Positions 20,330 to 62,334 of a stretch of DNA of 64,000 bases are shown here, piece after piece. The notes beneath the pieces were generated by a model. It saw only the letters and a program-made list of their open reading frames with translations, searched no databases and was not told where the DNA came from. This stretch comes from Ylistrum balloti (lineage: Eukaryota): positions 124,001 to 188,000 of the forward strand of contig NW_026782467.1 in the NCBI RefSeq assembly GCF_031769215.1. Direction: 5' to 3'. The position numbers and the translations under genes were made by a program. The stretch's first letter is position 1; every line of letters begins with the position of its first letter.

Positions 20330-20900
20330 CTCCTATCTTAGCATCAGCTTAGTTTTATCAACCTTTGCTTATCTCATGAATTAACCCCAGTCTAGTCATA
20401 GCCATATTTCACGAAATTCCTTTCTTTACCGAAATATAGTCCTAACAATCTTTTAATAACCTTCTATCTTAACATCAACTTAGTCTCAATAACATTTTAT
20501 TAACCCTTTGTCTTAACATCAGTTTAGTCTCAACAACCTTTTATTAACCCTCTGTCTTAAAATCAACTTAGTCTCAATAACAATTTATCAACCCCTTGTC
20601 TTAACATCAGTTTAGTCTCAACAACCTTTTATTAACCCTCTGTCTTAACATCAGCTTAGTCTTAACAACCTTTTATTAACCCTCTGTCTTAACATCAGCT
20701 CAGTCTTAACAACTTTTTATTAACCCCCTGTCTTAACATCAGCTTAGTCTTAACAACCTTTTATTAACCCTCTGTCTTAACATCAGCTTAGTCTTAACAA
20801 CTTTTTATTGACCCCTTGTCTTAACATCAGCTTGGTCTTAATAACCTTTTATTGACCCCCTGCCTTAACCTCAGCCTGGTCTTAATAACCTTTAATAACC
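20330..20900. repeat. 44-bp minisatellite, about 10 good copies with decayed edges
   Basis: Unit ttaacatcagcttagtcttaacaaccttttattaaccctctgtc; anchors at 20469 and 20513. Confidence 0.92.
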
Positions 20901-29829: not shown

Positions 29830-31610
29830 ATCACGCTCACAACGGACAACGGTATTGAGAAATAAAATCTAATTTAGCACTAAAGAATAACATTACATTT
29901 CTGTTAATGTTGACCGCTACAACAATTATAAATATATAATACGTGTTATATGTATGTACACAATATACAGGAGACAAACATGAGTAGGTAATAAATAAGT
30001 AATTAATTCCGTAAAATACGTCACGTTTTGTAAATTTGAATACGTTTTCAAGGAGAAATAATATTTGGACAATGAGTGACTGATCAAACATTATTTGTTT
30101 GTCGTCTAAATTGCTACTTGACAATGGGAAATCTTCCTACGGGACAATGGAACAGCAGAAAATGTATCGAATCTCCTTACCGAACAATGGAGCAGCGCTT
30201 AATGTATCACCTTCCAGAACGGTGAAATGTCAAGTTGTATGTAGAAACGCACGAGTGCAAATAAACGATTTAAAGGGTCATTGTGACAAATTACCCGTAC
30301 AACACAGGTCGATGTTTTGATTACAATCGACACTTCTTTGACAATCAGTTCTGTATCTCGGACATAGCTCATTGACATCGTCATGTGAAATAAACAAAAT
30401 CTCTATGGTATTCGGACCTCTCGAATATAAAAATAATCTCTGAAGTATTTCGATTTCTGTACAATAAACAAGATGCCTTAAGAATTCTGATCTCTGTTAA
30501 ATGAAATGAACAAAAGCACTCTACCATTGTGATCTCTGTAAAAAATTCCATCTACAGATTTGTGTTTAGAAAATGGTTAGGAGATTCTTGTTATAAAATA
30601 GATAAAGGAAAAACGATATTGTCATTTACAGGATATCTTAATATTATGATAGAGGACCACATATTAAGTCCATGAATCAAATGACAAGTCTCTCTTTCAC
30701 CAACACAAGTACTTATTATCCAAAATATATTCCACTTTGGGAGTGTATTCCACTTTGGGAGGGGGGGGGGATGGTTGTCGATTGTGACAATTCTCCGTGA
30801 CGCGGGTTTCTCTTAATTATCCTGACATGATCTACACAACACTGTTACGACGCATTGTGACCATGGTCTTTGATCCCTGATTCAGACAATAACTAGAGTA
30901 TGTTCCGTACTAATAGCTTGGCTTTCTCCCAACCATTTTAGGTGTTTTACAACGAAGGACAGACGGACGGACGACACATCTAGCGAGTTACAGATACAGA
31001 GTACACACTTAATAGCTCTGATCTGATATCAACACCTCTAGCTAGTAATGTACCAGTAGTTCATTTATAACATGTATAAGGACGTCTGGACAGACGAGTA
31101 GCATGGTTACATAAAACCTACGGATCTTTACCAGGCGTTTGATAATCTTTATATATGTATAACAAATTTAGATAAAGCAACGTACACATTGTTAGACAAA
31201 GCATATGAAAAATATCAAAACAAAGAAATGTAATAATTTGTCTTTTACAGGTCAACAGCTCCATAAAATGTTGATTTCATGTTAAAACAATCCTTACATT
31301 TGACATTTACAAGCGTCCTGTTGACTCCGTTATATATAGCTTGTTTTTATGTTGATTACAAGTGCTATATGAAAAAGTGTTAAACATTTATTTTTAACTC
31401 ATTGAAATATCCAGTCGCTTTGAAATATAATACCTGCGTGTCACGTTTCATTCGGATAGCTTCACGCACGCACACATGGACTTAAAGTTCTTTTGAAATC
31501 ATTCTTTACTGAAAGTTATGAACTTTATTGAACGCCATAAGCGTTTTGATATTTATTTTGATCGAATTTTGTCTTCAGCCCTTGCAAAGTTTCAAACGAT
31601 GGTCCTTAGA

Positions 31611-31785
31611 ATCACTGACGAGACCTAGAAGGACGAAACGGCTGTATAATGTATCATCACTGACGAGAACTTGAAGGTCGAAACGGCTGTATGATGTATC
31701 ATCACTGACGAGATCTAGAAGAACGAAACGCCTGTATGATGTAGCATCACAGACGAGAACTAGAAGGACGAAACGGTTGTATAAT
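31611..31785 (+). ncRNA. Tandem array of four 45-nt minimal type-I hammerhead ribozyme motifs
   Basis: Each unit reads CATCA-CTGACGA-GnnC-T(A/T)GAA-G(G/A)nC-GAAA-C-GGCT-like loop-G-TA|TGATG-TA(T/G). Cores at 31615, 31660, 31705 and 31750 (the last is CAGACGA, mutated). Predicted GUA cleavage after 31646, 31691, 31736 and 31781. Confidence 0.85.
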
Positions 31786-34700
31786 ATTGTAAGATTTGCC
31801 ATTTGGCTCTATGGTTTCTAATTCTAATTTGTATCAAGAGATGTCTTTTGTTCAAGCTTTAAGTGTAACGGTTTTTTATCATATAAGTATTACAATGCAG
31901 GTCCCCATATGGTGACGTGGATGGCTGATGACTGGTTGAGTTGCTGGTTGGTTGACTCTGTCGACTTGGTTGGTTGACAGGATTTTCGTCTCTGCGACTC
32001 CTCCTGTGTCTGGGTATCGTCTCACCGACGGACGGATTGTTTATATAAACGGACGGGTGTAAACAGGGACATTGCAAGTGAAAAAAAGCAAGGGAAATAT
32101 CAAGATCCAAAGTGTTGCAATGAGGACAGCGCCTTTATCTAGATATCTTCAATGTCCTCTTGGTAGATAAACCATCCGATTCTCCAAGTGGATCACTTTT
32201 AATAATGAGGCAGTAGAATGCAACGTCCCTATTCTCTTCGGTGGCTCCTAAATAGAAGACATCAGAGAAGTTCTGTCCGTCCTGCTGACTTGTCCCATAA
32301 GTATTGCCTCTCCCGACATGTAGTAAATATACAGTAATGATAAGATTACATCTGATCTTGGTCAATAATCGGTAAAGTCCTATTACTTTTATCTCATTCC
32401 ACATCTGTTTAAATCATGGTACAACTTAACCTTGTGTTCTTGTCTTTACCCATTGCACAATGCTGTTTTCATCTGTATATATGTAGATAGCGATTTAAGT
32501 AAACTACTTCAGCGTGTAATATGCTGTTCAATTCTATAATATGTTACATTATGACCCATGAAATATGTTCCATATTTACTTTCATGTATAATATCTTACA
32601 GAACTATTTTTCTATAAGGTGTTTAGTATTCTGAGCTCAATTTGTTTATTTGAATTTTAAGCGTGCAGTTATGTACATTATTGTACTTCTGTGCCATTAT
32701 ATGACATAAACAATCTGTTTTTGTTTAGGACTAACGACTGCCGCCCTATGTTATCATTTGCGTAAGTGTGTTATAACTTACACAGACCCGTAAAATTATA
32801 CCAACAAGTACCATCACAAAACTACTTGAACGTACAGCGCAGCCGTCGACCTTCCATATCTGAGTCTAGTATTCAGATATACTCAACTGCTACTGGCAAA
32901 TCGGATCTGAATAAAGGCTAAGAAAATGATGCGTTTTTATGTATTGAAAACGACTGTGCAGACAACACGAGGCATTAACTTCTAGATTGTAGGTTTTTCT
33001 ATAACTCTTATTTCCATATGATTACGAATAAAATTTTGTTGCGAGACTATGGAAATGCATGGACAAGGAATGGAAAGAAATGTACAAGTGTATAAAAAGG
33101 AAAAAAACAGCGATAGATTCGACAGACCTGTCATTTTTTCATGCTGCCTTATGCATGGACAACAAAGATGAAGATATCTATATTTTTAATGTAAATCAAA
33201 GACACAATCATTGGCATTGGTAATAATTTAATAAAACGAGAAAACTGGCATGAAATCATCCCGCTTTCTTATAGAGTAACACTGTGAATTTGTTATTACA
33301 TAAACGATGAAAAATACACAATTCAATTAATGAAGCGTGGTTTTGCTTGCATGGCTGATTGATGTAGGTTGGAAGACTTAGTTCTCACGAAGTTCTATGA
33401 CGAGGGAACAGATATTCCTCACACCAAAAGATCAAAGAATAATGCCGAACTTTGATTTCTTTTTCGCGTTCATGAATGACCAGTCCTCCTTCTATCACAC
33501 CACCAATATATTCTCTACGTTCTTTCTCCTATCCTCCTAAGTCGTTGTTGTTTACTAGATACTTCTCGCAACATCAACCACAGCAGCTAGTTATAAAGAA
33601 TATTGGCAAGTAAACATATCTGTGAACCTCAGGATCCCAATCAATAACAGAATCATCTCATGTAGATCAAACGTTCAGATGAATCTTGAACCCACCTGTG
33701 TATTAACAGGCATCAACGTTATTTGTTTGTAATTTGTCTTCCCATTAACTGATAGCGTGCTACAGAGACGTAGAGATGTACATAAGATGACAAGAATCAA
33801 CACCACTCTGATCAAATGTTAAGAATTCATCAGGTTAGATCTAGTTGTTATGTAATATTGTTAGACTGGTCAGATCAACATTACAGCAAAATATATAAAA
33901 CATTGCCGTACAGAGATTTATATAAAAGAGCCTCATATGACGGATTATATACCATTTCGCAATTCCTCGCTGTTGTGTTTACCGTCGGTTGCCACTAGCT
34001 ACGAAATTCGACCTATGAGAGGTCACTCTCCTATCATGGTGGATAGAAAGATTATTCAAAACGTCACAAATGTCACGAATTTTCTTCCGTAATACAGACG
34101 AAGAAGCCTACTTAATACCCTAAACTATTTTAATATGACATCAAGTGTGTGTTTTGATGTGCGAACTACTTCCGACACGAATGCTCTCAGTCGAAAACAC
34201 GTCTGATGGGTTGGTAGATATACATATGTATAGATATATAGATAGATTAGTTGTTTGCTTCAGCTCGGACGTCTATCAAGCGCTAGTTATAAATTAACTC
34301 AAAATTGCTTAATGTCTAATCCATAACCATACTGAGTAACATTTATTTAATTCTATTATTTACATTCATAAATCTTATATTCGTCCTTCAAATAGCCTTG
34401 AATAGCTTCCCAAAAAACCTGGGATAATTTAATAATCACTTCACAAAACTATTTTGTGAAATGCTAATCACAGTGTTAATTATCATAAACAGATCAAGGC
34501 CACAAGATTCAAAACTGTTTGTCCCTTGTCGAGACAAATCAAACAGAATATTGAAATAGTTCCTACAGGAAATAAACATTATTTCTGCGTAATTGACCAT
34601 CACGTAAGGGATTAAGTTTTGCTGTGGTAACTCACATGTAAACAACTGAAGCCAAATCTGACATCATGAGGCGGTCTTACGTAAATCTCTCGACGATGTT

Positions 34701-37604
34701 TGTTTACAAATTTAAACTAATCCCGTTATATTAAAGAAATATTGAGAAAATTATTACCAGCGATGTTTTGGAATACAATGTTGTCCTGATCTTCAGCGTA
34801 CATCTTCCAATAAGGTAAAGCTGACTTTGTATTACGTATGTGAAAAAAAAATATTGCGTGTATTTCAAGAATGAAGACGAAAACATTGTAAACATGTCTG
34901 GAATTTTCTAGAAAAGATATTGATGATTTAGGAACTATATCTAGAAGCTGATCAAGTTAAATACAGAACTATAATGATACAATGGATAAACACATAACAA
35001 ACAGGAGTCTTATAAAACATGGATATCTGATAAAGATAGAATATTATCGATAACTGTGAAGTTCTCTGGACGTTACAGATAAATACACGCTTCCATGGCG
35101 CCCAGTGAAATATCCGACACACTTTTAAGATAGCCATCATCTATTCGAGCGTGCCCTGATATTTGGATTTATCATTGATAATGCGAAGTAACAGAGATTT
35201 CCAATAAAGCTATCCCAAGATAATGATAAAAAAACTTAAGTAAAATATACAACACCACTGAAGAAATTCACCAGTAGATCTTTGTCAATGCTTAACTTTT
35301 AGGTTTTATTTAGAGTAAATGCTTTCTCGGATCACGTGAGTAGAGTAGAGCACAAAATGATCGTAGGACTTTCGAGTATTTAATATTGCTTATGTTATAA
35401 ATGACAAAGGTGCCAAAGACGCCGAGATTGAATCTATCTCATTCATATTCGTTCAATGTAGACAACGGGAGTCTTTCAGAGACGTGGAAGACACCCGTTC
35501 CTGATACAAATTGTCCGTCCTTAAAGTCACTGATCTCTGCGCAGTGATTGGTATTGTCACCTAGATCACCTCAAACATGTGCTAATTAGTGGAACACAAA
35601 AGTAATTTTAGATCACTAGCGGATTATTTCGAATAAAAGTATCATGACCCAAGATAAAGACAAAAGGATTGAACGAGGACTGAGTCGATAAATTTGGAGA
35701 ACGAACAATGTCATTGATCTGTGTGAAAGAGACGACGATAAAACTGTACGATTCAAATTCCAAAATGTCTTAAGGTAGATAAACATTGCGAATTGATTAC
35801 TAATTCAGACAGATCTGCATCTGTTATGAAAATGGAAGGGTTTTCACGAATCATTATGTTACTATGGTCAATAGGAAAGAAACAGTTATCGTGCTTTCTA
35901 CATTACAAGGTACGTTGTAAGAACTGAAAGAAACACGTCATACTTTGTCATCTAACTGATGATATCCATATAAGATACATTTGTTCAATATCAAATTGTT
36001 GAGAACGTCCTACACAAGATCGATCTCCCTTTATTTTAAACTAAGTATCTAATTGCTACATCCTTTGATTACTCCCGTGGCGTTTGTCGGACTCTTTATC
36101 CGTGATTGGCAACTGCGCTCGGTGTCAAGGATGAAACAAAGCTGGCCTACTATTGGAAGATGACACAGTTGACTGTAAACATTTCAGTGTAAGAATAAGG
36201 GCACCCACATAACAGTACTAAAGATACAATAAGAAAGGTCACGTATCGTGGCCAAGGGTCATATGTCGCCATTAGGACTAGACTATCGAAGAACGAAGAA
36301 CATGGAAAGAAAACAGGCGTCAAAACCCCAATCAACTGGCGACATTATCACTAACGGAACTATAAAAGTACACTTAACGATATAGTATCCATCAACCAGT
36401 TGTACATGTAGATGTATAAAAACGTGTAACTGCATGTAATTTTTATGAATACGATCAACTGTAGAAACAAAATCCATATATTTTTGAAGCACCTGCTTTA
36501 GTTCTCGATTTTACTCCACTGGCAAACTTCTCTCATTTTTAGAATAGACATCCCTATGTAATAGGAGACTACAGCTGAGAGAAAATACTCATAGCTACAG
36601 AGCTCCTTCTTCATATTGTTGCGATAAAAAAAGATCTACAGTCTACCATGCTCTAGTATTGCTTCTTGATATACAGTTTTTTCTGTAGGTTATATCCCCA
36701 TAGCATATTTACATATACTCACTCTACCCACAGTCAGATCACAAGAGCTGTTTTACCCGCTTTAACTTTTCATCCCAAAATTTTTAAAACTTTTTCAGGA
36801 GTCTCCGTGTAAATCTTTCTTTTGTTCATATTTTGTTTTATGAATTTGAGTTTGAATAATGTTGTCATGTTAATATTTTCTTGATGTTTTTTTAATGACG
36901 TCGTAAAGCGGTGCCATGAAGATATTTGCTATAAGACCCGCTAACTTGAATTTTAGAATTACTAGGATTATTGATAAGCGACATACTGAGCGTGACGGAA
37001 AAACCGCTTCCGGAACTTCGTGGTTTATTCTTTCGTACACAATGCATTTATTGTTTTCTCGGTGTCTCCTCTGCTCTTATTGAAATGTTATCCTGGTTTT
37101 TGATGCCATGATATTAAATGCATTCTTTCTGCTCCGTGTTTAGAAATATTTTCGGACATAGCTTGTCTCCGCCGAGTATCCTTTCTGAAAAAGATTAGGC
37201 ATGATGTATCCCATATTATGACGAAAAACTGTACCAGTGACATATGTCTAACCAAACCATCAAGAGTTGGTGCACACTAAATTTTATAAATGATACAAGT
37301 AAACTGTGCTGTGTAATGCAAATTTAGAATTATATACGGAAGACCCCGATGAGAACTTAATTTGCATCATACAGCTATTTTGACTTTCTAGAATGCTGTG
37401 GGCCTAAATTGTTGAAACATAAGTTGGTCGAAAAAGACGGTCGAAATCCATGCTAAGAACCATCCGGTAAGGTGTGCTAGCTTCAGAATTCAATAAATAC
37501 ATACATTTGTATGTCAGAGATCTGCTTTCAAATGAACTAACGCTTGTGTTTATACTGAACAAACACATATTTCATACGAAGGAGACAACCTTGACGACAA
37601 CAAA

Positions 37605-40390: not shown

Positions 40391-41902
40391 CATATGACGT
40401 TGAAACCTACATTAACTTCTACACCAAGTGATTCACTAAACGTTGTCATTTTGAAATAACAGACGAGTCGAAAAAATCCTATTTATCTCAAAGCAGTTAA
40501 TACAGAAACAACCCTACCTTACCTTACCTTGAAATGAACAGACTAGTAAAGTGCTATATTTAGATTCATTTGACAGACAGTAGGATACTCAATATAGAAA
40601 TGCTTTTGGCTGTTGCTAAACAACAAACCGATCTAAAAACACTTGAGAGGAGAGTTGTGACGAGCCCTAATGTAGAGCATATTTGACTTAGGGCGTAACC
40701 ATGCGTCTAATTCACTTTTAAGAAACGTTACGTGTTCTTCACGGGACTTTTTTGTATTCAAGAGAAGATTACCCTTTATGTTTTGACGGTAATAAGATCA
40801 AACTGATCCTATTGTTAGGAATGAAAGGGCCATTTTGAATGGCTTTATTTCACACATCTATAGACAAAGCGTGTAAACTGATGGATATTGATCTATATTT
40901 GTGTTAGTATCAAATAAATAAAGCCTTATAATCGCTCTCAGTTCGTGAATATCGACACGGCGGCTTTTAAATTACGCCACCCAAATCACGCGGGCAATTT
41001 AGGGGCAAATATCGGTCCATTTTCAGTCATCTCCAATGTTTATTTAGATAAACCGAGCAAAATTACTTCCGTAATATTGTTATGTTGTGTAATAGAAATG
41101 GACCATTTCATCTTTTTGTAAGGAATGAGGTTGAGAAAAATGTGCATGTGATATATATGAAGAATGTGCCTTTTAATGTTTATCAATAAAACATTCCAAG
41201 AGATGTTCTTGCTCTGAATCAAAAGTAAAATTAGTTAGTTGAAGTTGCATATTGCAACCCCACCCTTCTCTTGGCCACAAGGTGGAGCTGCAGGCATCCT
41301 ACGCTGTACTTCCTTCTGTGTTACACGTGCTGACGCGAATGATGTCAGATATTATCTATGAACTTGTTTTGACATTTATTAAGCCAGTGTTATAAGTGTG
41401 ATCTGAGATTGGCAGAGAGGATACAAACATTCTTCATATATCTTTATAGAAAATCATGACTATCAGTCTTCAATCTTGAAGGTTTAGTAACACTTTTACT
41501 TGTTTTGTGTGATATCACCACACAGACACGACCCGCGTAAGAACATTCCTTACATAAGTAAATTTGTAGATACATGTGCACTTCCTGATGTGTGCTACAA
41601 TTTATTACTGATCCTCGTAACCACATTTATTTATGATTTACTAATTATATCTTTTAAAACGTGTTATTTTTCATAATAAAAAAAACAGATAGGGTGGAGA
41701 GTAATACCGGATATCTATTCTAATCCATCTTGAAACACATTTGAACAATTGACAGAATGCGGAAACGTGCAAACCTCTTGCTAAGTAAATAAACAGCAGT
41801 TATGGGTTGTTCAAATGCAAAGGATATCTTTGTAAAGATCTGTCTTCTGTGTAAAACGCCTGTAAATTGTTCAAAAAGACACAAACATGATTAGCATTTT
41901 CC

Positions 41903-42006
41903 GATACAAATTAAGAGTTAGATACAGTAGAGCCAAACAAAAACAAAAAATCAAAGTCGTTTCGTCCTTCTAGAGCATAAATTTCAAAATCTGGCGACTG
42001 AGGAAA
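41903..42006 (-). ncRNA. Truncated member of the hammerhead-containing repeat family
   Basis: The minus strand reads ctagaaggacgaaacgact...gtttggctctactgtatctaactcttaatttgtatc: the 3' half of the ribozyme plus the shared 3' flank. The CTGAnGA core is missing. Confidence 0.7.
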
Positions 42007-42857: not shown

Positions 42858-43570
42858 TTTTATGACATTATCGTTCGGTTGGTCGTTAGATTTTATGTCT
42901 ATCGTTTGTCTTTATGTCTATCGTTGTCTTTATGTCTATCGTTTGTCTTTATGTCTATCGTTGTCTTTATGTCTATCGTTTGTCTTTATGTCTATCGTTT
43001 GTCTTTATGTCTATCGTTGTCTTTATGTCTATCGTTTGCCTTTATGTCTATCGTTGTCTTTTTATGACATTATCGTTCGGTTGGTCGTTAGATTTTATGT
43101 CTATCGCTTGTCATTATGTCTATCGTTTGTCTTTATGTCTATTATTGTCTTTATGTCTATCGTGTGTCTTTATGTCTATCGTTGTCTTTATGTCTATCGT
43201 TTGTCTTTATGTCTATCGTTGTCTTTATGTCTATCGTTTGTCTTTATGTCTATCGTTGTCTTTATGTCTATCGTTGTCTTTATGTCTATCGTTTTTCTTT
43301 ATGTCTATCGTTTGTCTTTATGTCTATCGTTTTTCTTTATGTCTATCGTTGTCTTTATGGCTATCGTTTGTCTTTATGTCTATCGTTGTCTTTATGTCTA
43401 TCGTTGTCTTTATGTCTATCGTTGTCTTTATGTCTATCGTTTGTCTTTATGGCTATCGTTGTCTTTATGTCTATCGTTTGTCTTTATGTCTATCGATTGT
43501 TTTTTTTATGACATTATCGTTCGGTCTGTATTTAAACCTATTGATCGACTCTTTATAGCATTATCGTTCG
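42858..43570. repeat. 18/19-bp minisatellite with an interspersed longer cassette
   Basis: Unit gtctttatgtctatcgtt(t). The cassette atgacattatcgttcgg(ttggtcgttagat) occurs at 42862, 43064 and ~43509. Confidence 0.95.
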
Positions 43571-47700: not shown

Positions 47701-47830
47701 ATATATATGTACTTGACGTTGTTCTAAAATTATCTGATATATGAAAATTGCAAAGTTTATCTAATTTTTTGGGCAAGTGCATCTCTCTGTCTAGATGTTG
47801 ACTCCTAGGTTTCAAAATTTTGGACCCTTA

Positions 47831-47919
47831 GCGTCACTGACGAGTACTAAAAGGACGAAACAGCTGTATGATGTAGCATCACTGATGAGTACTAAAAGGA
47901 CGAAACAGCTGTATGATGC
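47831..47919 (+). ncRNA. Tandem dimer of 45-nt minimal type-I hammerhead ribozymes (best-preserved copies)
   Basis: GCGTCA-CTGACGA-GTAC-TAAAA-GGAC-GAAA-CAGCTG-TA|TGATG-TA-GCATCA-CTGATGA-GTAC-TAAAA-GGAC-GAAA-CAGCTG-TA|TGATGC. Both cores are intact. Stem I of the second unit is a perfect 6 bp (GCATCA/TGATGC); stem II has one A-G mismatch. Predicted cleavage after 47868 and 47913. Confidence 0.88.
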
Positions 47920-48608
47920 ATTTTTCTTGTTTTCGTCTACTGTATGTAACTATAAATTTGTATTAAAAGGTGTTATTCACTTGTGTCTTTTGTACAATGC
48001 TCTATTGCTAACAGAGAATATCCTGGATATCCTCTAAACTCTGTGATATAAAAAGACAATGGATTGCTCATTTACATATATTAAAACAAGTCATATCCAA
48101 ACATTGACAGAAATTATCTGTGTTCTGTGACTGAATTTTTCTATTTTGTTATGTTACATCCCTTATCGCCAAGCTAAACATCGATCTACCGCCTCGTCAT
48201 TTAGAATCCATATCTTTATTAATCATAATCACAGCTTCTGTACTTTGTATCTTCAACGAGCCAATTAAATTCAGAGCATTGCCCTACAGAATTGTAAAGA
48301 TTATAAGATACCCATAACTAATAAAATCAGTTTTACGGAGATAACTTACTGATTTTAGGCAACAGCCATTCTTTCTCACCAATATGGAGAAGGTAATCAC
48401 TGTAAACGACAGTTAATGTCCATGTTTGGTGTTAAAGACGTTTCCTTTCCATAAACAGTGGTAAAGTTACTATGTCTTTGTTTCAGATATCTCTTGTCAT
48501 AGGGACTGACATTTTTTCTTCCAATTTTCGTATCCTCCTCCCCGCGGCCTCTGTATCCCCCTCCCCGCAGCATCTCTCCGCCTCTCCTAAGTTTCAAAAT
48601 TCAGCATA

Positions 48609-48652
48609 GCATCACTGACGAGTTTTATAAGGACGAAACAGATGCATGATGC
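48609..48652 (+). ncRNA. Single minimal hammerhead motif, probably inactive
   Basis: GCATCA-CTGACGA-GTTT-TATAA-GGAC-GAAA-CAGATG-CA-TGATGC. Stem I is perfect, but the cleavage triplet is GCA instead of GUA. It shares the family flanks (48584-48710). Confidence 0.78.
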
Positions 48653-49496
48653 AATTTAAAATAATTCATAATTTGGCTCCACTGCATCTTAATCTAATTT
48701 TGTATCAAAAGTGCGATTCACTTGTTTAATTCTTCCTTCAGTTTTAACTAGCCTATGTGTAGGTAAATGAATGTTTTACTGGATACAATAACGCCTATAG
48801 TAGAACTGTGTCTGAAGATATCAGAGCATGACTACTAAACTCATGGATGGTTCGTATGTACAACCTCAAGGTATGTACAACAGCACTTAACAAAGAAAAC
48901 ACGTGAATCAGGAATAAAGGTTTTATAATGGCTTAAAATTTGTGGTGTTATTGACTTATATAAATGCACATAAAATACACTTTTACATTACATTTATATA
49001 TATAAGTGAACAGCTACATGAAGAAAAGAACAGTGTAGATTTATCGAAAGTATAGACATTGATAAAGCGAACAGTATATAGAGAGGCAGCTAGAAATAGA
49101 AAGACGAATTATACCTGTACGGTCACCAAAAAACAGATGCCCACCAGCACCACTAACCCACATTCCGTCAGACGGGACAGAAAATGGTGGTCAGTGTGAA
49201 GATGGCAAACGTGATCTCTCTGTGGCTTTTCGAAAAAGAGCAGGCGCGATAACGTCAGCCCAGAGATTAGAGCTAGGTTAGGAATGTGGATTATTTATTC
49301 AATTATTTTGACGGACTTAATAAATATCATCAACATGTCAGAATTTATCTAGTTTAGAATCATCTTCCTCTTCCTCCCTGTCCATAACCAATCATCTTGC
49401 TGCGACGTGTTCAGTGTTAGATTTGGTCTACAATTAGGGCAGGGTGTTGCCTTCTAAATTATAGTTTAAGAACAGGTCAAGAAGCATAGACGGCCC

Positions 49497-51268
49497 CTCT
49501 CTACCTCTTCTCTGTATCCCACTCTCTACCTCTTCTCTGTATCCCACTCTCTACCTCCTCTCTGTATTCGACTCTCTACCGCCTCTCTGTATCCCGCTCT
49601 TTACCTCCTCTCTGTATCCCACTCTTTACCTCTTCTCTGTATCCCACTCTCTACCTCCTCTCTGTATTCGACTCTCTACCGCCTCTCTGTATCCCACTCT
49701 TTACCTCTTCTCTGTATCCCACTCTCTACCTCCTCTCTGTATTCGACTCTCTACCGCCTCTCTGTATCCCGCTCTTTACCTCCTCTCTGTATCCCACTCT
49801 CTACCTCCTCTATGCTACCCACTCTCTACCTCCTCTCTGTATCCCACTCTCTACCTCTTCTGTGTATCCCACTCTCTACCTCCTCTCTGTATCCCACTCT
49901 CTGCATCCTCTCTGTATTCCACTCTCTGCCTCTTCTCTGTATCCCACTCTCTACCTCTTCTCTGTATCCCACTCTCTACCTCCTCTCTGTATCCCACTCT
50001 CTACCTCCTCACTGTATCCCACTCTCTGCCTCCTCTCTGTATCCCACTCTCTACCTCCTCTCTGTATCCCACTCTCTGCATCCTCTCTGTATTCCACTCT
50101 CTGCCTCCTCTATGTATCCCACTCTCTGCATCCTCTCAGTATCCCACTCTCTACCTCCTCTCTGTATCCCACTCTCTACCTCCTCTCTGTATCCCACTCT
50201 CTGCCTCCTCTCTGTATCCCACTCTCTGCATCCTCTCTGTATTCCACTCTCTGCCTCTTCTCTGTATCCCGCTCTTTACCTCCTCTCTGTATCCCACTCT
50301 CTACCTCCTCTCTGTATCCCACTCTCTGCATCCTCTCTGTATTCCACTCTCTGCCTCTTCTCTGTATCCCACTCTCTACCTCTTCTCTGTATCCCACTCT
50401 CTACCTCCTCTCTGTATCCCACTCTTTACCTCCTCTGTATCCCACTCTCTACCTCCTCTCTGTATCCCACTCTCTACCTCCTCTCTGTATCCCACTCTCT
50501 GCCTCCTCTCTGTATCCCACTCTCTACCTCCTCTCTGTATCCCACTCTCTGCCTCCTCACTGTATCCCACTCTCTACCTCCTCTCTGTATCCCACTCTCT
50601 ACCTCCTCTCTGTATCCCACTCTCTGCCTCCTCTCTGTATCCCACTCTCTACCTCCTCTCTGTATCCCACTCTCTACCTCCTCTCTGTATCCCACTCTCT
50701 ACCTCCTCTCTGTATCCCACTCTTTACCTCCTCTCTGTATCCCACTCTCTACCTCCTCTCTGTATCCCACTCTCTACCTCCTCTCTGTATCCCACTCTCT
50801 GCCTCTTCTCTGTATCCCACTCTCTACCTCCTCTCTGTATCCCACTCTCTACCTCCTCTCTGTATCCCACTCTCTACCTCCTCTCTGTATCCCACTCTCT
50901 ACCTCCTCACTGTATCCCACTCTCTACCTCCTCTCTGTATCCCACTCTCTACCTCCTCTCTGTATCCCACTCTCTGCCTCCTCTCTGTATCCCACTCTCT
51001 ACCTCCTCTCTGTATCCCACTCTCTGCCTCCTCTCTGTATCCCACTCTCTACCTCCTCTCTGTATCCCACTCTCTGCCTCTTCTCTGTATCCCACTCTCT
51101 ACCTCCTCTCTGTATCCCACTCTCTACCTCCTCTCTGTATCCCACTCTCTACCTCCTCTCTGTATCCCACTCTCTACCTCCTCTCTGTATCCCACTCTCT
51201 GCCTCCTCACTGTATCCCACTCTCTACCTCCTTTCTGTATCCCACTCTCTACCTCTTCTCTGTATCCT
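49497..51268. repeat. 25-bp pyrimidine-rich minisatellite, about 71 copies
   Basis: Unit ctctctacctcctctctgtatccca. The 25-aa repeat in ORFs 49812-51341 equals 3 units. Confidence 0.97.
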
Positions 51269-52640
51269 AATCTCTGCCAGTGCTTCCTATATTTCCCTTC
51301 TGCTCATTTTTCTATCCTTCTCCTCCACTGAATGGCCGTAATAGTATACGAAAAAACCCGTTTAGTAGATAAATAACATGTTATATAAAACAGCTGACAA
51401 TAAATACTTATAAGGTGAATCTGTAATGATGCTGTACATTTATATTGCAGTATTTAATGTCGCAGTCATGGATTTAATCTTGAATTCGTAAATTTACAAC
51501 TGAGTGACTACAAAAATAAAACGAGCGCGTTGTTGTATGATTGGAGTACAGTGTGCTGAGTGTATGAACCGCTGTGTAATGTATATACCAGTACATGTAA
51601 CACATCATAACGTCACGTATACCCACGCCAAAGTATACAAGGAACGTCAATGTTGTCAAATAAGAATTTGACGTTTTACGGCAGCTTACTGCGAACGCCC
51701 TAGACTTAAATGTCAGCACAAACAACGGTCCTTGTGTGTAAATTTACAGAGTACAAAACAAAAACTCAAAAAATAAAAACACGATCCATGCTGCTATCAC
51801 ATTTGAAAAGTGTTAGTATGTTTCTTCGAAACAATAAAAAAGTCCCGCGTGCGCACGCGATCGCCTTTGGCTAGACAGCTATGTTCATTCTATTGCAGTA
51901 TACATGATACATATGATACATATGGAGCAGGTGTAATGCGATTCCGGTGGAAAGATAATTCTGTCCTGTTTAATCTAATGCCCATGACATGCATGGTAAA
52001 GTCAAAAACATTCGCATGGTAGTTTGCACGTGTGCCGTACAATGACTCTATGGACAATGGACCAATAGATACTAGCCCCTTATTTGGGCAAAAGAACACT
52101 CTAATGATAAACATTGGTCAATAACCAACTACCAGTAACCAAGGACGATAAACTAGGCCATAAAATATCCGAAACGCTGTGTCCTCACGGCTACGAAATA
52201 TTTGAAGGGTGTATCAAAAGTCGTTCCTGATTCACATTTACGTTGCTCCTGGGCTCATTTATTGTATTGGTTTATTTTGGTTGATAAACTTTTTCTTGTT
52301 TGCATTTAATTTACATAAATGTCTTAAAGGACCGGAATCCGAATAGAATTAACAAGAAAATAAAGGACCTTAATTTGGCAGCCTTTATTCTGTTCTAATC
52401 TGTAGCAGTTATTGCTGCGAAAATTACGTAAACTAGAACAAAACTGTTTTAACACGTTACTGAAATTGTCAAAACTTTTCTCCAAGACATATTGTACATA
52501 CCTTGATGTTCGATTCTATTGGAGAATTACAGACCTGATTTGGTATCCCAAACATGGACTGTACAAAACGTACACAAATGAATAGCGCCTTCCAATACAA
52601 ACTTAGTTAGATACAGTATAGCATAAACGTGAATTAAATT

Positions 52641-52681
52641 GCATTATATAGCCGTTTCGTCCTTCTAGGACTCAGTGATGC
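52641..52681 (-). ncRNA. Minimal hammerhead motif with a 3-nt core deletion
   Basis: Minus strand GCATCA-CTGA-(nGA deleted)-GTCC-TAGAA-GGAC-GAAA-CGGCTA-TA-TAATGC. Stem II is perfect, and the shared 3' flank ctgtatctaactaagtttgtatt is present. Confidence 0.75.
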
Positions 52682-54758
52682 CTAAATCTCGATGCTTATG
52701 AGGCGACTGAAGAAAAGCAAAGTGACGAATGAAACGTCAACATATTTACGGGGAGATGCACTACCCCATGATTCAGGAAATTTCGTTATTTTCATATATC
52801 AGATGATTTTAAAACATCGTCATGTACATGTGTAAGGGCAACGTAGAGACTGAACGCCTGTATAGAGATCAAGATAACATGATGGCAGGTATAATATTTG
52901 AGTTGTATCTTATTGTATTTGGTGTACGTCTGTTACATGGCATTACAATTATCTTGGACAATCACAGACAAACCCTCCATAGCACTGTCGGAATAGACTT
53001 TTAGATTACATTACTGCTATGTTTCACACTGTTGCCTCTCTGATTTAAATTTTGTTTGCTTTCCATGTTGTAACTAATTTACAAATGTCAAGAAAGAAAT
53101 TGTTTCAAATTTAACACGAGGTTAGCTCTTCACCATTGCATGTTGTTTCCAATCCCGTCACTGCAGAGCGTCTGATCCCTCCAACATACAGGTTAATCTT
53201 TGACTTAAAGATGCTCCACGGTTTGATCTACACAGTTTAGCCTCTGGTGTTTAAATGTGTCAGATTCTATAATGTTGGATATTTTCACAGCATTAGTATT
53301 ATCTCTAATAAAGGAACCAGCGTAACTACTTCTCCGGAATTTCGAATACTTGACGCTTGCGCTATTCGATAAACATGTGCAAACGCCGGATCAATGTCAA
53401 CAGTTCCCCGCTGGAAATCGGAGAGATTCCAGGTTTTATTTAACGTTGGCATGGTGTTAAGATAGATTCCAAATTGCATTTTCTCCAAAACTAATCATTT
53501 CTACTAATTGAATTGTCTGCTTTCTGTGTATTTCGCCCTATGGAAAGCAATACATGTCGAAAAGAAGATTACTCTAGTGTAAACAGCTCTAAACTTCCAA
53601 TGGACAATCTGATCGTATACAATGTAATTCGGAATAAATCATATATTGCAACATATTTACTGTTTCGGTATACGCACACGATAAATGGATATAAGTTACT
53701 CACCAAATTGTTTAAAGTTTCATTCCCTTTATACAATGAAAACGTTTACAGAAATTTTAAGAAATACCAATTTATCGTGTTTCGGTAAGCAAATACTATG
53801 ATTTATTTAACATTTTTGTTTTATACTCAGTTTTATTGAGCTTTCATGAATCAATATACAGTGACGTATTTAGATCTAACTTTCTTGTAATATGCGATGC
53901 TCGGAGGGAATACAGAGACCAATCATTTTCAATCGATTACATTAAAATAAATAAACAAGGACCGAATGTTAGCCTTACTTTAGTATTGCTGTATTTACCG
54001 GAACCGGAAGTCGACTTGACTTTACCTAAAAATGATACGTAGACAGTATATCGTCTCCTGGATAAAACTCATAGACGTCATTGCCAAACGTTACCAAGTG
54101 ATGCCAGAATATGGATCTATTTTTAATCCGATGTACACTAGTGTCAACCTGTTGGCACTGAGCACCCGTCTGTTTCCCCAAACAACTGTAAATAGAACGC
54201 CGGGATCAGCATCCACATATTGCCACACGTGTCGTTACAAGACAGCTGCCAACACGCTTAGTAGTGCATATAATTAAATCTTTATCACTTCGTTTCTCTA
54301 AACACAAACATGGAGAACAACATAATGAAAAAATATCAGTCTTGAATCTGGATTGCTGTGAAGTGGGTGTAAATGTGTTGAAATTCGATGGTAATGGAAT
54401 TTCTAATAATATCATCCATTATTTTCGTGAAATATACTCTTCAAAATAGGCTCATCCAGATGGTTACTTGTGTTTCGTCCGAATCTCTTTCTTTGTATTA
54501 TTTTGATATTTGTTGTAAACATATCTTACTGAAATAATTAAAATTTATTGTTATTAAATTGAATAAGTAAAATCCTTGTATTATATTCAGAACGACGTTT
54601 TACAGCAGTAATCTATATAAATAATATATAATAAATAACTCACGTGACAAGAAATCAGAGAAATTCATCAAAGCAAATCTCTCAATCCTTAAATCGACAT
54701 CCATTGATGACATGCATGAATTTAGCTGGTGTATGTACTGGTATAACGTGTAAGCGAT

Positions 54759-55595
54759 TACGTTTGTCTAATGTGTTTAGTGGTATAAAGTGCTGATGTG
54801 TCGATCATACGAACCTCCGTGTACGTTTGTCTAATGTGTTTAGTGGTATAAAGTGCTGATGTGTCGATCATACGAACCTCCGTGTACGTTTGTCTAATGT
54901 GCTTAGTGGTATAAAGTGCTGATGTGTCGATCATACGAACCTCCGTGTACGTTTGTCTAATGTGTTTAGTGGTATAAAGTGTTGATGTGTCGATAACACG
55001 AACCTCCGTGTACGTTTGTCTAATGTGCTTAGTGGTATAAAGTGCTGATGTGTCGATCATACGAACCTCCGTGTACGTTTGTCTAATGTGTTTAGTCGTA
55101 TAACGTGTCGATGTGTCAATGATACAAGACTGTACGTTTGTCTAATGTGTTTAGTAGTATAAAGTGTCGAGGTGTCAATGATACAAGACTGTACGTTTGT
55201 CTAATGTGTTTAGTGGTATAAAGTGTCGAGTTGTCAATGATACAAGACTGTACGTTTGTCTAATGTGTTTAGTGGTATAAAGTGTCGAGGTGTCAATGAT
55301 ACAAGACTGTTCGTTTGTCTAATGTGTTTAGTGGTATAAAGTGTCGAGGTGTCAATGATACAAGACTACGTTTGTCTAATGTGTTAACTGGTATAAAGTG
55401 TCGAGGTGTCAATGATGCAAGACTGTATGTTTGTCTAATGTGTTTAGTAGTATAAAGTGTCGAGGTGTCAATGATACAAGACTGTACGTTTGTCTAATGT
55501 GTTTAGTAGTATAAAGTGTCGAGGTATCAAGGATACGAGCTTCTCTGGTATAAAGTGCTGAGGTGTCGATAATGCGAGTCCCTGTGTATGTTTGA
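54759..55595. repeat. Minisatellite switching from 63-bp units (5 copies) to 59-bp units (about 8 copies)
   Basis: Anchor tacgtttgtctaatgtg at 54759, 54822, 54885, 54948, 55011, 55074, then 55133, 55192, 55251 and onward. Confidence 0.95.
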
Positions 55596-59580: not shown

Positions 59581-59611
59581 CCCCCCCCCCCCCCCCCCAC
59601 ACACACACACC
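59581..59611. repeat. Poly(C) run followed by (CA)n
   Basis: About 18 C followed by acacacacacacac. Confidence 0.9.
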
Positions 59612-60079
59612 TGTCCCCCACCTTTCTTTGATGACCTTATATTTCTGTATTCTTTTTCATCTTTCCCAACTATAAGTAAAGCGCAGTAATAACAGCTGTA
59701 AAATGAATAACTTTAGGATAATCCTTTCTTCAATATGTTTTCGACGCTCGGCTACTCTATACATATTCTTATATGTACTTCCGTTGTAATGGGATTTTAA
59801 TTTGTATAGGAAGGCTTTTATTAACCTTTGTGTGTTTTGTACCATCTTCGAGATGGCAGATGGTACACACTGCTTATGGACTTTTAAGTCCCAGAGGTTT
59901 GTCTTTACCTACATACGATGTTTTAAACGTTAGAATAGTGATACGGTTCAGAGCATACACATGTATGTTCTTTTCAGATAATTCAATATTGAACGTAACG
60001 AGTTTGATTGAATATTAAGGTTAGTACACCTTCCCATCTCGGATTGGACATGTATAGGTTTTGTTATTTAGGACCTTAC

Positions 60080-60122
60080 CATCACTGACAAGTCCTACAA
60101 AGACGAAACAGCTGCATGATGC
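60080..60122 (+). ncRNA. Minimal hammerhead motif inside a ~119-bp direct-repeat unit, probably inactive
   Basis: CATCA-CTGACAA-GTCC-TACAA-AGAC-GAAA-CAGCTG-CA-TGATG, with core G8>A and a GCA triplet. The upstream ggacat..ggttt.gttatttaggacctta.catcactgac is repeated at 60046 and 60165. Confidence 0.75.
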
Positions 60123-60231
60123 AGATTGTTTGGCTCTATTGTACGATCTAATACATGAGAGATAGGACATTTACAGGTTTCGTTATTTAGGACCTTAACA
60201 TCACTGACTTACACAGAGATTCGTGAAAATG

Positions 60232-60290: not shown

Positions 60291-62334
60291 GTATCGCAGA
60301 GAGTAGTTATTGCTTTTGTCTAGGCTACTCATGGAGTGTATGAACAGGAAACTAGAAGCAGATTGTCCGAAACAATTTTCATACCAGCACCTCGACTATT
60401 CACCTAAACATCTGTAGTCTACAATCGTCGTCATAGTAATATATACATTCCCTCGTGCCCCTTTTCTGGCACGTGAGAGCTCGTGCTAAGGATGTCCCTG
60501 CTAATTTGTTCGAAAGGAATGCTGTACTGTAACCACATTTTTACTTCCAGGGAATGTTTTTGTCTGTGCCCGACGCCAGATTGGATTATTATACCCTAGA
60601 TACAATACAAGATGAAGGAAGGGTCACACATTCATTGATTATCATACAAAGGGAATCAAAGCTGATACACACGTAGTAATACCAGATATTTATCCATCTG
60701 TATCACCTGAACCCTATTCACATCCTATACCTTAATTTTATCCTCTCTTCTGTTTAGGATGTTCCTTCCATTTTTGCCCTCCAAACACGGACATGCATTC
60801 TATAAAAAGAATATCGCATGCCATAGTTCAACACGTGTACTAGCATGACAGCATCATGCATAAAGAAAACAATCTTTTGTCATTGTACAACGTCTGCTCA
60901 TATAGGATCAACAAAAAGTAAACTATTTTTGTAAACGATCTTTATCTCTGAAGGCCTCTTATTCATGGTCTCAAACATGTATAGGGGAACAAGACGTCGT
61001 AACGCCTACATCCTCAGCTCGGCCGAGAAGAAAATAAGTGATGTTTATTATGTGAAAGAGAAATGTGAGGCATACAGCACAACAATAATGTGAAGGAAAT
61101 CACATTGTTATCTACGAGAGAGAGAAGTTTATGGTCCAAGAGAGGAATAAAATAAAATAACACAAACCATGTATCTTTGGTATGTACAGTTGGAATGCTT
61201 TTCGGTACAAAGATCAGCTAGTGTGTAAAATTTTATAGCTTAATAAACGAATCTATAATATAACAGATTCTCAAAGAAAGAAATTGGAACTGTAGTACTT
61301 TGACGAAAGGAACATACATCTTTAAGACAAAATGTGTAATGTTGTTCCGAGAGAGTTTTCCAGCAGTGCTAAAAGGCATTAACACTGATTCACTTTTTAC
61401 GCGTAAACATGCAATGAATTGGTTTCGGATCACACTAAATATCAACATCTGATAGTAATACAAGTTAGAAGTGCAAAACATTTATATAAAGGGCTACATA
61501 GATATGAAAGGGTGTCGTATACATATAATACTCTGGTATACACCGGTTAGTGACACCGAGTATGTTATACAACAGGATTATGATATATCCATGTCTATGT
61601 ACACTATCTACATCCTTTATCACTAACATCGACCAAAATAGTAGGAGATAATTGGATGCCGATTCGTACAAAGATCTCGGGTTATGACGAGGTAGATGTA
61701 GAACTGATGACTATGAGTCTAGAATGTACTGCCAGTGGACTTACTTCACCTCTGTCTGGGCCATTCACTTACATGTCGTTGTGATATAAGCGTATCAATT
61801 AGAACAAACATTCCGGAGCATGTTTTTATTCTCGCGCCTCCCAATTATGGAGTTGGTCGGGAACCAGTTGTTCAGCATATTGTTGGCACCTTCAGACACA
61901 AATCATCAAACTCTACCGAAGTATAAAGGCACAAAAGGTTTTCTGTGTGAAATTCAGCGCAGCAAGTCCTAATACAAGGTCGCTGCTATAACTGCTTTGA
62001 TGTATTAACCAAGAGATAGATTAACAAAGGGCAGTTGGTGGGAAATCATATTTTTGACATAGGCACTTGCAACTCGAGGAAGTAACATTTGCAAAAGTCA
62101 AAACTTTTAGCGAATATTATTCTTGGATTTAAAATCGACGCAAGATGGATAAGATAGAGCAACAGCAAACCGCTGCCACAGAAGAAATATTTACACGGAG
62201 ACCCCTGGAAAAAAAACAAGGAGAAAAGACGAGGTGTTCCGGGAGAGGAAATGCAAATCTTGGTCAATCCAAGTACATTTATGTAATGCCACCACTGTCC
62301 TGATGAGTGACAGTGTTAAATCACAACGTTGGAA

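What the first reader, a model, noticed from the sequence alone, without database searches (positions are those of the whole stretch)
47831..47919. Intact tandem double hammerhead with perfect palindromic ACAGCTGT helices, multimerised in the same 45-nt register
Seen: two units 45 nt apart, both with intact cores and GUA sites. Each carries the perfect 8-nt palindrome ACAGCTGT at stem III. The 31.6-kb array has ACGGCTGT/ACGGTTGT, still self-complementary through G-U pairs. Units within each locus share locus-specific variants (TAAAA loop and AGCT here; TAGAA loop and GGCT at 31.6 kb), yet both arrays use the same unit boundaries. Established: hammerheads with unstable stem III cleave as double-hammerhead dimers via palindrome pairing (newt satellite 2, ASBVd). 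Inference: the two arrays multimerised independently (or were homogenised separately) into the arrangement that rescues catalysis. This points to a ribozyme-linked mechanism or selection rather than random slippage.
Basis: partly seen in the sequence, partly recalled or inferred. Interest (0 to 1): 0.82.

Follow-up and report, generated by a model that had tools for sequence, protein, structure and literature searches.

The report
Decaying two-unit hammerhead ribozyme repeat
Two back-to-back copies of a 45-base self-cutting RNA motif (a hammerhead ribozyme) sit inside an old copy of a very common short mobile element of this bivalve-like genome; the pairing that lets two copies work together is real, but it is a family-wide inherited layout and this copy is weakened.

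Summary
Positions 47829-47918 are two 45-nt type-I hammerhead units with intact cores, GUA sites and the loop-less palindrome ACAGCUGU. In the folding ensemble the two palindromes pair with P about 0.85.

- The units lie inside a dispersed element of about 300 bp (5' arm, HHR x n, 3' tail). The genome holds at least thousands of copies, with n from 1 to at least 35.
- The 45-nt period (373 of 406 spacings) and the inter-unit junction TGATG-T-AGCATCA (346 of 373) are the same in every array sampled. The shared register is therefore most simply inherited from one founding duplication, although recurrence is not excluded.
- ACAGCTGT and the TAGAA loop are the family consensus, not locus marks.
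- Non-ribozyme modules of the same element also form arrays in a shared register (tail about 71 nt, spacer about 47 nt).
- Inside arrays, mutations ignore base pairing, and 45% of units have broken cores.
- Both units here share an A.G mismatch in helix II and score below Rfam's threshold. Well-kept relatives pass it.

No RNA data could be had, so cleavage is untested. This scan noted the same 45-nt hammerhead arrays before on other DNA of this genome. I found no paper describing spacer-less 45-nt hammerhead arrays.

The parts
47707..47828 (+). 5' arm of this copy of the dispersed element
   Evidence: Aligns to other copies in the window (47707-47996 against 52829-52560; alignment A1) and to the family consensus (arm identity 0.82).
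47829..47873 (+). Hammerhead unit 1. Core is intact. Helix I 5' strand is GCGUCA, helix II is GUAC/GGAC with an A.G mismatch, and the loop is UAAAA.
   Evidence: (RF00163, 20.9 bits).
47874..47918 (+). Hammerhead unit 2. It has the same private helix II mismatch and loop, and differs from unit 1 at two CpG-type positions.
   Evidence: RF00163, 24.6 bits; identity 0.956.
47860..47867 (+). Palindrome ACAGCTGT of unit 1 (helix III strand). The predicted cut is after A47868.
   Evidence: pairs with 47905-47912, P 0.81-0.88.
47905..47912 (+). Palindrome ACAGCTGT of unit 2. The predicted cut is after A47913.
47919..47996 (+). 3' tail of the element, with a small deletion relative to the consensus
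   Evidence: tail identity 0.93.
31607..31786 (+). Four-unit array of the same family in another element copy. It is decayed: every unit has a helix II mismatch, and unit 4 has the core mutation CAGA.
31787..31840 (+). Diverged 3' tail of the 31.6-kb element copy
   Evidence: 31742-31840 against 48607-48711; tail identity 0.76.
48584..48725 (+). Single-unit copy of the element (unit at 48607-48651). The octamer is ACAGATGC and the site is GCA, so it is not cleavable as written.
52560..52829 (-). Single-unit copy of the whole element, with the HHR decayed and the GGCT variant
59799..60143 (+). Partial tandem: tail end piece, spacer, arm, one HHR (core broken), short tail piece
41866..41973 (-). 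Decayed copy (3' part of the HHR plus tail)
37281..37391 (-). Decayed copy (HHR remnant plus tail)

Best explanation
The finding is one old copy of a short, AT-rich, non-coding interspersed element whose central module is a type-I hammerhead ribozyme (Rfam Hammerhead_1 kind).

Shown:
- The full unit is a short tail-end piece, a spacer of about 109 nt, an arm of about 170 nt, HHR x n, and a tail of about 81 nt. Most copies hold only arm, HHR and tail.
- The hammerhead's helix III is a loop-less 8-nt palindrome. One unit cannot fold it, but two units on one transcript can pair their palindromes into a double hammerhead.

Inferred:
- The spacer-less 45-nt junction between units most likely arose once in the family.
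- It then spread with the element, or by recombination or gene conversion between copies.
- Unit number changes locally by unequal exchange or slippage. That keeps the register and lets private variants, such as GUAC and UAAAA here, come to occupy both units.
- If transcribed, a well-kept multimer would cut itself after each GUA into 45-nt pieces. This particular dimer is weakened by a helix II mismatch in both units and is probably a poor ribozyme or an inactive one.
- The element was probably mobilised by Penelope-like-element machinery, as proposed for animal retrozymes.
For: Element and copy number:
- There are seven copies in the window, most with one unit.
- There were 3763 first-look candidates genome-wide, and arrays run from n = 2 to at least 35.
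- In the tail-anchored sample almost all copies have one unit.
- The consensus of arm, HHR and tail is 296 nt with GC 0.34.

Membership: well-kept units pass the RF00163 gathering score, 34.1-38.2 against 34.

Fold: the consensus dimer's minimum-energy fold is exactly the double hammerhead at -30.1 kcal/mol. In the window dimer the palindromes pair with P about 0.85, but the full structure is only -14.1 against an MFE of -18.3, with z = -0.23.

One junction: the period is 45 in 373 of 406 spacings and the junction letter is T in 346 of 373. T dominates in every array, and the outer junctions are always the same.

Arrays not grown from old monomers: 0.45 fixed private differences in arrays of 5 or more units, against 9.7 of 45 in monomers.

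Local turnover: private variants are shared within short arrays, and first units are more diverged than inner units, 6.5 against 3.5 differences.

General DNA-level array formation: tail arrays of about 71 nt occur at four loci and spacer arrays of about 47 nt at two loci, each in one register. TRF lists 103 tandem-repeat rows in 64 kb. Arm-(repeat)n-arm elements are a general bivalve feature (PMC7492417).

Neutral decay.

PLE-like traits: partial tandems with a repeated tail end (PMC8557442). PLEs with their own min-HHRs coexist in the genome, as reported for retrozyme-bearing animals (PMC7229834; bioRxiv 10.64898/2026.07.22.740005).
Against: - No RNA data could be had, so transcription and cleavage are untested.
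- The flank-only tree is a star. Multi-unit and single-unit copies are not separated (15 changes against 15.1 in shuffles), so one origin of the junction is inferred from junction uniformity and is not shown by phylogeny.
- HHR units in arrays are clearly less diverged (92% identity to consensus) than the tails (82-87%) and arms (70-76%) of the same loci. Simple inheritance plus neutral decay does not predict this. It needs exchange between loci, late array import, or some selection.
- Loci were chosen by similarity to this window's copy, and units by a core-biased pattern, so the samples are not random.
- No autonomous partner was tied to the element. The PLE loci inspected carry different hammerheads.
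Confidence: 0.68

Rival explanations
1. Recurrent, structure-guided duplication. The hammerhead module is re-copied again and again at the same boundaries because a polymerase or reverse transcriptase that reaches one foot of helix I switches to the other foot. Independent loci would then end up in the same register. This is.
For: The unit boundaries lie within 1-2 nt of the two feet of helix I. Short arrays have units that are much more alike than their flanks are to consensus, for example L004 with identical units and L009 and L011 at 0.978. Multi-unit and single-unit copies are interspersed on the flank tree.
Against: The tail and spacer modules have no such fold but also form arrays in a shared register at several loci. 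The junction letter is uniformly T, where independent events at the AG microhomology should often give C. Long arrays carry almost no fixed private differences, although monomers of similar flank age carry about 10.
Confidence: 0.1
2. Selection for catalysis. Arrays are kept by the host or by the element because only multimers self-cleave, and they yield functional 45-nt RNAs.
For: Units are better kept than their flanks. Loops vary 1.5-2 times more than core positions. The unit is extremely abundant in an independent DNA data set (a rough measure). Dimers are the active form of such ribozymes (PMC4209133, PMC7229834).
Against: Variant positions keep pairing at the shuffled rate, and compensatory changes are at or below chance. 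Only 240 of 439 cores are intact and only 157 of 439 units are fully competent. The core's slightly lower divergence is biased by the pattern used to find units. Both arrays in this window carry helix II mismatches in every unit.
Confidence: 0.1
3. RNA-circle origin. The 45-nt pieces released by cleavage are circularised, copied by rolling-circle reverse transcription and inserted as arrays, as in the retrozyme model shrunk to the ribozyme alone.
For: The retrozyme model exists for units of 170-400 nt (PMC7229834). Arrays are strictly periodic.
Against: Nearly every array whose edges could be read is flanked by the same arm and tail with the same outer junctions, so the arrays are internal to the element. 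The unit junction lies 5 nt downstream of the cleavage site and not at it. A 45-nt circle made of one hammerhead is a poor template with no known priming site; that point is inference.
Confidence: 0.04
4. A plain local slippage duplication of no wider meaning, unrelated to other arrays.
For: The genome is rich in short tandem arrays. The two units differ only at two CpG-type sites.
Against: The same period and junction recur in all 33 arrays sampled. Random slippage would give varied boundaries.
Confidence: 0.05

Closest known systems
Rfam RF00163 Hammerhead_1 (type-I hammerheads of animal repeats: newt satellite 2, Schistosoma Sm-alpha, cave cricket)
   Same: Same core, same 4-bp helix II (GUCC/GGAC in the family consensus), same helix I of about 6 bp, and the same loop-less helix III drawn as <<<<>>>> in the model. 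Well-kept units pass the gathering score.
   Different: The two units of the finding score 20.9 and 24.6 bits, below the threshold of 34. The repeat unit here is the ribozyme alone, 45 nt, and not a repeat of a few hundred bases.
Double-hammerhead (dimeric) cleavage of newt, axolotl and ASBVd hammerheads and of PLE min-HHRs (Forster et al. 1988 as cited in PMC4209133; PMC7229834)
   Same: Helix III is unstable or absent, with a palindromic sequence that pairs between two copies. Tandem copies on one transcript give the active fold. The predicted ensemble here shows that pairing.
   Different: In those cases the partner copy lies a few hundred nt away or on another molecule. Here the partners abut with no spacer, and the helix I strands of neighbours form a hairpin with a 3-nt loop. 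Activity was not tested here.
Animal non-LTR retrozymes (PMC7229834; bioRxiv 10.64898/2026.07.22.740005)
   Same: A type-I hammerhead in a short, AT-rich, non-coding repeat (GC 0.34). A unit of a few hundred nt (about 405 nt with spacer), close to the mussel's 350-390. PLEs coexist in the genome. Some head-to-tail copies exist.
   Different: Most copies are dispersed singles, not long tandems of the whole unit. What is multimerised is the 45-nt ribozyme module inside the element. CircRNA expression is unknown.
Penelope-like element pLTR min-HHRs (PMC4209133; PMC8557442)
   Same: Dimer-type hammerheads tied to retroelements. The partial tandems and a repeated terminal 'tail' piece resemble PLE insertion signatures.
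   Different: The PLE loci of this genome carry other hammerheads, with 6-nt palindromes, a long helix II and a bulged base. No RT/GIY-YIG ORF adjoins the copies studied.
Bivalve mobile elements carrying central tandem repeats (Cg_HINE/Pearl; PMC7492417)
   Same: The layout is left flank, variable number of short repeats, right flank, dispersed through the genome, with a constant arrangement that those authors read as one founding event.
   Different: Helentron hallmarks (subTIRs, terminal palindrome) were not looked for. The repeat here is a ribozyme, and the partial-tandem signature points to a retroelement instead.

Membership tests
Hammerhead ribozyme, type I (Rfam RF00163) | Conserved core CUGANGA ... 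GAAA and a cleavable NUH site | tested here: met
   Both units have CUGA(C/U)GA, GAAA and GUA.
Hammerhead ribozyme, type I (Rfam RF00163) | Score at or above Rfam's gathering threshold (34 bits) | tested here: not met
   The window units score 20.9 and 24.6 bits, and there were no window hits at gathering. Family relatives score 34.1-38.2 bits and pass, so the family is a member and this copy is a degraded one.
Hammerhead ribozyme, type I (Rfam RF00163) | Helix II of 4 standard pairs closed by G10.1-C11.1 | tested here: not met
   G-C, U-A, A.G and C-G in both units: three of four pairs, with G10.1-C11.1 kept. The family consensus has all four.
Hammerhead ribozyme, type I (Rfam RF00163) | Self-cleavage | not testable with these tools
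   No RNA run was available. This needs an in vitro transcription assay.
Double (dimeric) hammerhead | Helix III cannot close on its own and is self-complementary, so that two copies pair | tested here: met
   ACAGCUGU is a perfect 8-nt palindrome with no loop. Pairing between the two copies has P 0.81-0.88.
Double (dimeric) hammerhead | The whole double structure is the favoured fold | tested here: inconclusive
   The centroid shows it. Its energy is -14.1 against an MFE of -18.3, with z = -0.23 against shuffles. The consensus dimer folds into it at -30.1.
Animal non-LTR retrozyme | Type-I hammerhead within a non-coding, low-GC repeat of 150-450 bp | tested here: met
   About 296 nt without the spacer and about 405 nt with it, GC 0.34, and no ORF.
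Animal non-LTR retrozyme | Whole units arranged head to tail, from dimers to long multimers | tested here: inconclusive
   Only pairs or partial tandems were seen, in 6 of about 60 loci plus one in the window. Most copies are single.
Animal non-LTR retrozyme | [quoted passage not shown] | not testable with these tools
   No RNA run.
PLE pLTR min-HHR | Lies in the terminal repeat of an element encoding RT and a GIY-YIG endonuclease | tested here: not met
   No ORF of 120 aa or more outside the tandem-repeat arrays lies within 26-54 kb of the window. Of 30 GIY-YIG loci, 10 carry recognisable min-HHRs, all of other sequence families; element copies near four of them look like chance neighbours.
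PLE pLTR min-HHR | Long helix II (6-8 bp) with an unpaired base after A9, and a minimal helix III | tested here: not met
   Helix II is 4 bp, there is no bulged base, and the palindrome is 8 nt. Compare the PLE-type motifs.
Bivalve Helentron-derived repeat carriers (HINE) | SubTIRs, internal inverted repeat, 3' palindrome | not tested
   Only the overall flank-repeat-flank layout was compared (PMC7492417).

The most novel reading that the evidence does not exclude
The 45-nt arrays are live ribozyme cassettes. When transcribed they would cut themselves into 45-nt RNAs that are nothing but one hammerhead, possibly circularised. The arrays would be kept near consensus, far better than their own flanks, because of that activity or through RNA-mediated renewal. 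This would be the smallest retrozyme-like unit known, with the multimer layout itself being what restores catalysis.
Probability: 0.12. Interest if true: 0.7.

Novelty: new variant of a known kind. Interest (0 to 1): 0.34.

Why it matters
Dimer-dependent hammerheads in animal repeats and Penelope-like elements are well described. This locus adds no new principle, and its two units are damaged.

The family it belongs to has an unusual layout. The repeated unit is the ribozyme alone, with neighbours sharing helix I and helix III and no spacer between them. I found no paper describing this; published ribozyme repeats are about 170-400 nt. The family could serve as a natural test bed for the double-hammerhead model and for how satellite-like arrays arise inside mobile elements.

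One observation is still unexplained: array units are much closer to the family consensus than their own flanks are.

Tried and rejected
- **Rfam at gathering threshold on the window:** no hit. The units appear only with the permissive threshold.
- **RNA evidence:** no RNA run holds the locus. The one run available is a DNA-like contig set whose contigs stop at 47736 and restart at 47957, so it can neither confirm nor vary the unit number. Its summed depth is only a rough sign of abundance.
- **Flank-only tree to test one origin of multimers:** a star tree with no supported inner branches and labels not clustered, so it was uninformative.
- **Link to an autonomous PLE:** GIY-YIG loci were found, but their hammerheads differ. 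Element copies near four of them look like chance neighbours of an abundant repeat.
- **Subfamily explanation for flank divergence:** the consensus built from the array-bearing loci themselves is the same as the monomer consensus, so this was rejected.
- **Polarity of array growth:** tail-side units look youngest. The loci were chosen with a query of two units plus tail, so I do not interpret it.
- **Further loci for the tail and spacer arrays:** Their shared register is read from hit coordinates only.
- **Literature searches for a 45-bp hammerhead satellite in bivalves, scallop or oyster:** nothing found. The library misses most subscription journals.
- an incomplete script with no result.

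Full report
**1. What is there**

The sequence at 47829-47918 is two head-to-tail 45-nt units (TRF: period 45, 2.0 copies, 95% matches; sequence).
- Each unit reads: a helix I 5' strand, CUGA(C/U)GA, a short helix II hairpin, GAAA, the octamer ACAGCUGU, A, then the helix I 3' strand.
- The predicted cuts, after GUA, fall at 47868|47869 and 47913|47914.
- Rfam's type-I hammerhead model (RF00163) aligns to both units end to end, but below its threshold: 20.9 and 24.6 bits against 34. Nothing in the window reaches a gathering score.
- The core pattern is found 7 times in the window against 0.5 expected.

Three details need correction.
- Both units carry GUAC/GGAC in helix II, an A.G mismatch, so 'intact' applies to the core only.
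- ACAGCTGT and the TAGAA loop are the family consensus and not marks of a locus.
- The 31.6-kb array (31607-31786, four units) is more decayed than described. It has a helix II mismatch in every unit, one octamer that is not self-complementary, and a core mutation in unit 4.

**2. Context: a dispersed element**

A self-comparison of the window showed that the units lie inside a repeat with conserved sequence on both sides.
- Further copies lie at 48584-48725, 52829-52560 (minus strand), 59799-60143, 41973-41866 and 37391-37281. Each has one unit or a remnant.
- In the whole assembly (648.5 Mb) the dimer query gave 3763 first-look candidates. Many loci have long arrays, from 2 to at least 35 units.
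- A sample anchored on the 3' tail alone, which does not favour multimers, gave about 20 dispersed copies, nearly all with a single unit, mostly decayed.
- The consensus is an arm of about 170 nt, one 45-nt hammerhead and a tail of about 81 nt, with GC 0.34.
- In six loci and once in the window, two copies lie head to tail, joined by a conserved spacer of about 109 nt. Often only the last 20-45 nt of a tail precede the spacer.
- That partial-tandem layout with a repeated terminal piece resembles what is described for Penelope-like elements (PMC8557442).
- There is no ORF of 120 aa or more outside the tandem-repeat arrays within 26-54 kb of the window.

**3. Is it a hammerhead, and a double one?**

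Well-preserved units from other loci pass Rfam's gathering score (34.1-38.2 bits), so the family belongs to Hammerhead_1. That model itself draws helix III without a loop.

Folding gives three results.
- The family-consensus dimer has the double hammerhead as its minimum-energy structure, at -30.1 kcal/mol: outer helix I, two helix II hairpins, an 8-bp helix III between the two octamers, and an inner helix I hairpin with a 3-nt loop.
- For the window's dimer the two octamers still pair with probability 0.81-0.88, and the centroid shows the double topology.
- However, the full double structure is worth only -14.1 kcal/mol against an MFE of -18.3. The sequence also folds no better than its shuffles (z = -0.23).

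The shared helix II mismatch has cost this copy most of its stability. The principle that such hammerheads work as dimers is established (PMC4209133; dimeric axolotl constructs in PMC7229834). Cleavage here is untested.

**4. Did the two arrays multimerise independently?**

Across 33 arrays:
- The period is exactly 45 nt in 373 of 406 spacings.
- The sequence between the cut site and the next core is TGATG-T-AGCATCA in most cases, with the junction letter T in 346 of 373.
- T dominates in every array and no array is all-C. Yet a fresh duplication using the AG microhomology of the single-unit element (CCCT-T-AG ... TGATG-C-AG) would give C at three of the four nearest breakpoints.
- The outer junctions with arm and tail are the same in nearly every array whose edges could be read.

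Arrays of five or more units have on average 0.45 positions fixed away from the family consensus, and 15 of 22 have none. Dispersed single units differ from that consensus at 9.7 of 45 positions. Arrays were therefore founded by near-consensus units and did not grow out of old, diverged local monomers.

Together these results favour one founding junction that was passed on.

Local turnover also happens.
- Short arrays share private changes between their units: C18A and G22A at 47.8 kb, T17A and A34G at 31.6 kb.
- Units abutting the arm are more diverged than inner ones, 6.5 against 3.5 differences. This is the usual trace of unequal exchange, which keeps the register.

The flank-only tree could not test the single origin. 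It is a star, and multi-unit and single-unit copies are not clustered (15 changes against 15.1 in shuffles).

**5. Is the mechanism tied to the ribozyme, or is there selection?**

Controls from the same element argue against a ribozyme-linked mechanism.
- The tail, which has no ribozyme, forms arrays of about 71 nt at four loci. All cover the same part of the tail (query 18-20 to 79-80).
- The first 42 nt of the spacer form arrays of about 47 nt at two loci.
- By count of loci, these are about as frequent as hammerhead multimers in the tail-anchored sample.
- The window alone gives 103 TRF rows. Bivalve genomes are known for dispersed elements that carry central tandem repeats (PMC7492417).

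Within arrays there is little sign of selection on the RNA.
- Divergence from the array consensus is nearly flat: core 4.7%, stems 5.5-6.1%, loops 7-10%, CpG about 10.6%. My unit finder favours the core.
- Only 240 of 439 units have an intact core and 157 are fully competent.
- Where a helix position varies, it remains paired in 30%, 18% and 28% of cases for helices II, I and III. With shuffled partners the figures are 29%, 19% and 28%. Double compensatory changes are at or below chance.

I therefore find no support for selection on the RNA fold or for a ribozyme-linked origin.

**6. What remains unexplained**

In the same loci, array units are 92% identical to the family consensus (91.5% at positions my pattern does not fix). 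Tails are 82-87% identical and arms 70-76%, even against a consensus built from those loci. Neutral decay since insertion does not predict this.

Possible explanations:
- Exchange between arrays at different loci. Within-array identity of 0.896 is barely above between-array identity of 0.860.
- Import of arrays into older copies by conversion.
- Sampling bias.
- Some selection that my tests missed.

**7. Relation to known systems**

- The genome's GIY-YIG (PLE) loci carry their own hammerheads of the PLE 'min-HHR' kind: 6-nt palindromes, a long helix II and a bulged base. These differ from this family.
- The element is closest to animal non-LTR retrozymes and to the Sm-alpha or newt type of hammerhead repeat. 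It differs in that most copies are dispersed singles, and the multimerised part is the 45-nt ribozyme itself.
- Published ribozyme repeats have units of about 170-400 nt (PMC7229834).
- PLE hammerheads 'in tandem' are mentioned there, and artificial dimers and trimers were assayed in PMC4209133.
- I found no paper on natural spacer-less 45-nt arrays. The library searched is incomplete.

**8. Earlier notes of this scan**

Other windows of this genome had already been noted to hold 45-nt hammerhead arrays, and the 31.6-kb array was noted on this window. One earlier follow-up concluded that an array grew by ordinary DNA repeat expansion inside a dispersed element. My own tests agree with the DNA-level reading. 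They add junction uniformity, the module controls, the pairing test and the unit-versus-flank discrepancy.

The earlier notes call the animal a scallop or bivalve. I did not verify the species.

**9. Verdict**

This is a real but weakened double-hammerhead dimer. It is one decaying member of a very abundant hammerhead-bearing element family. The shared register is most simply explained as inherited and not as convergent. The locus itself is of modest interest, and the family's spacer-less ribozyme arrays are the part worth following up with RNA data.

Noticed in passing
L068:~2558 (-), L070:~2558 (+), L071/L076/L077/L088:~2534-2550, L069:~1062, L079:~2533, L083:~2341: GIY-YIG (Penelope-like element) loci of this genome carry their own minimal hammerheads about 0.8-1 kb past the endonuclease domain. 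They have 6-nt palindromes (ACAUGU, ACCGGU, ACUAGU), a helix II of 4-7 bp and a bulged base. There are at least three sequence families.
   Followed up: partly
G000:C422:240415-261997 (L072-L075, L089): Five GIY-YIG matches spaced about 5.3 kb apart on one strand, four of them in open frames of 755 aa. This looks like a tandem array of near-intact PLE copies.
   Followed up: no
L041 (G000:C473:1283600-1284363); also C515:302099-302876, C473:339649-339847, C246:438662-438789: The non-ribozyme 3' tail of the element forms its own tandem arrays of about 64-72 nt. Each unit runs from tail position about 18 to the element's 3' end.
   Followed up: partly
G000:C389:270936-271212 and C1243:113220-113402: The first 42 nt of the element's spacer form tandem arrays with a period of about 47 nt at two loci.
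   Followed up: no
array-bearing loci L002-L030: Hammerhead units in arrays are much closer to the family consensus (92%) than the tails (82-87%) and arms (70-76%) of the same element copies. This is unexplained.
   Followed up: partly
window 60055-60200: A segment of about 105 nt holding the arm end and the start of the hammerhead is duplicated just downstream of the 60.1-kb copy (..TTTAGGACCTTACCATCACTGAC.. and again ..TTTAGGACCTTAACATCACTGAC..).
   Followed up: no
window 2765-4904, 9298-10295, 16134-16669, 20437-20900, 42892-43504, 49497-51275, 54759-55536, 62331-64000: The window is packed with other short-period tandem arrays (periods 19-126 nt, up to 71 copies). None of them is hammerhead-like by the core pattern.
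   Followed up: no
units across L001-L030 (e.g. linker variants TGACG, GCGTCA): Helix I variants GCGUCA/UGACGC occur beside the commoner GCAUCA/UGAUGC. Two CpG decays on opposite strands would turn the first into the second while restoring the pair, which would be a possible neutral route to an apparent compensatory change.
   Followed up: no
window 59581-59598: A run of 18 C followed by (CA)n lies just upstream of the 59.8-kb partial tandem.
   Followed up: no
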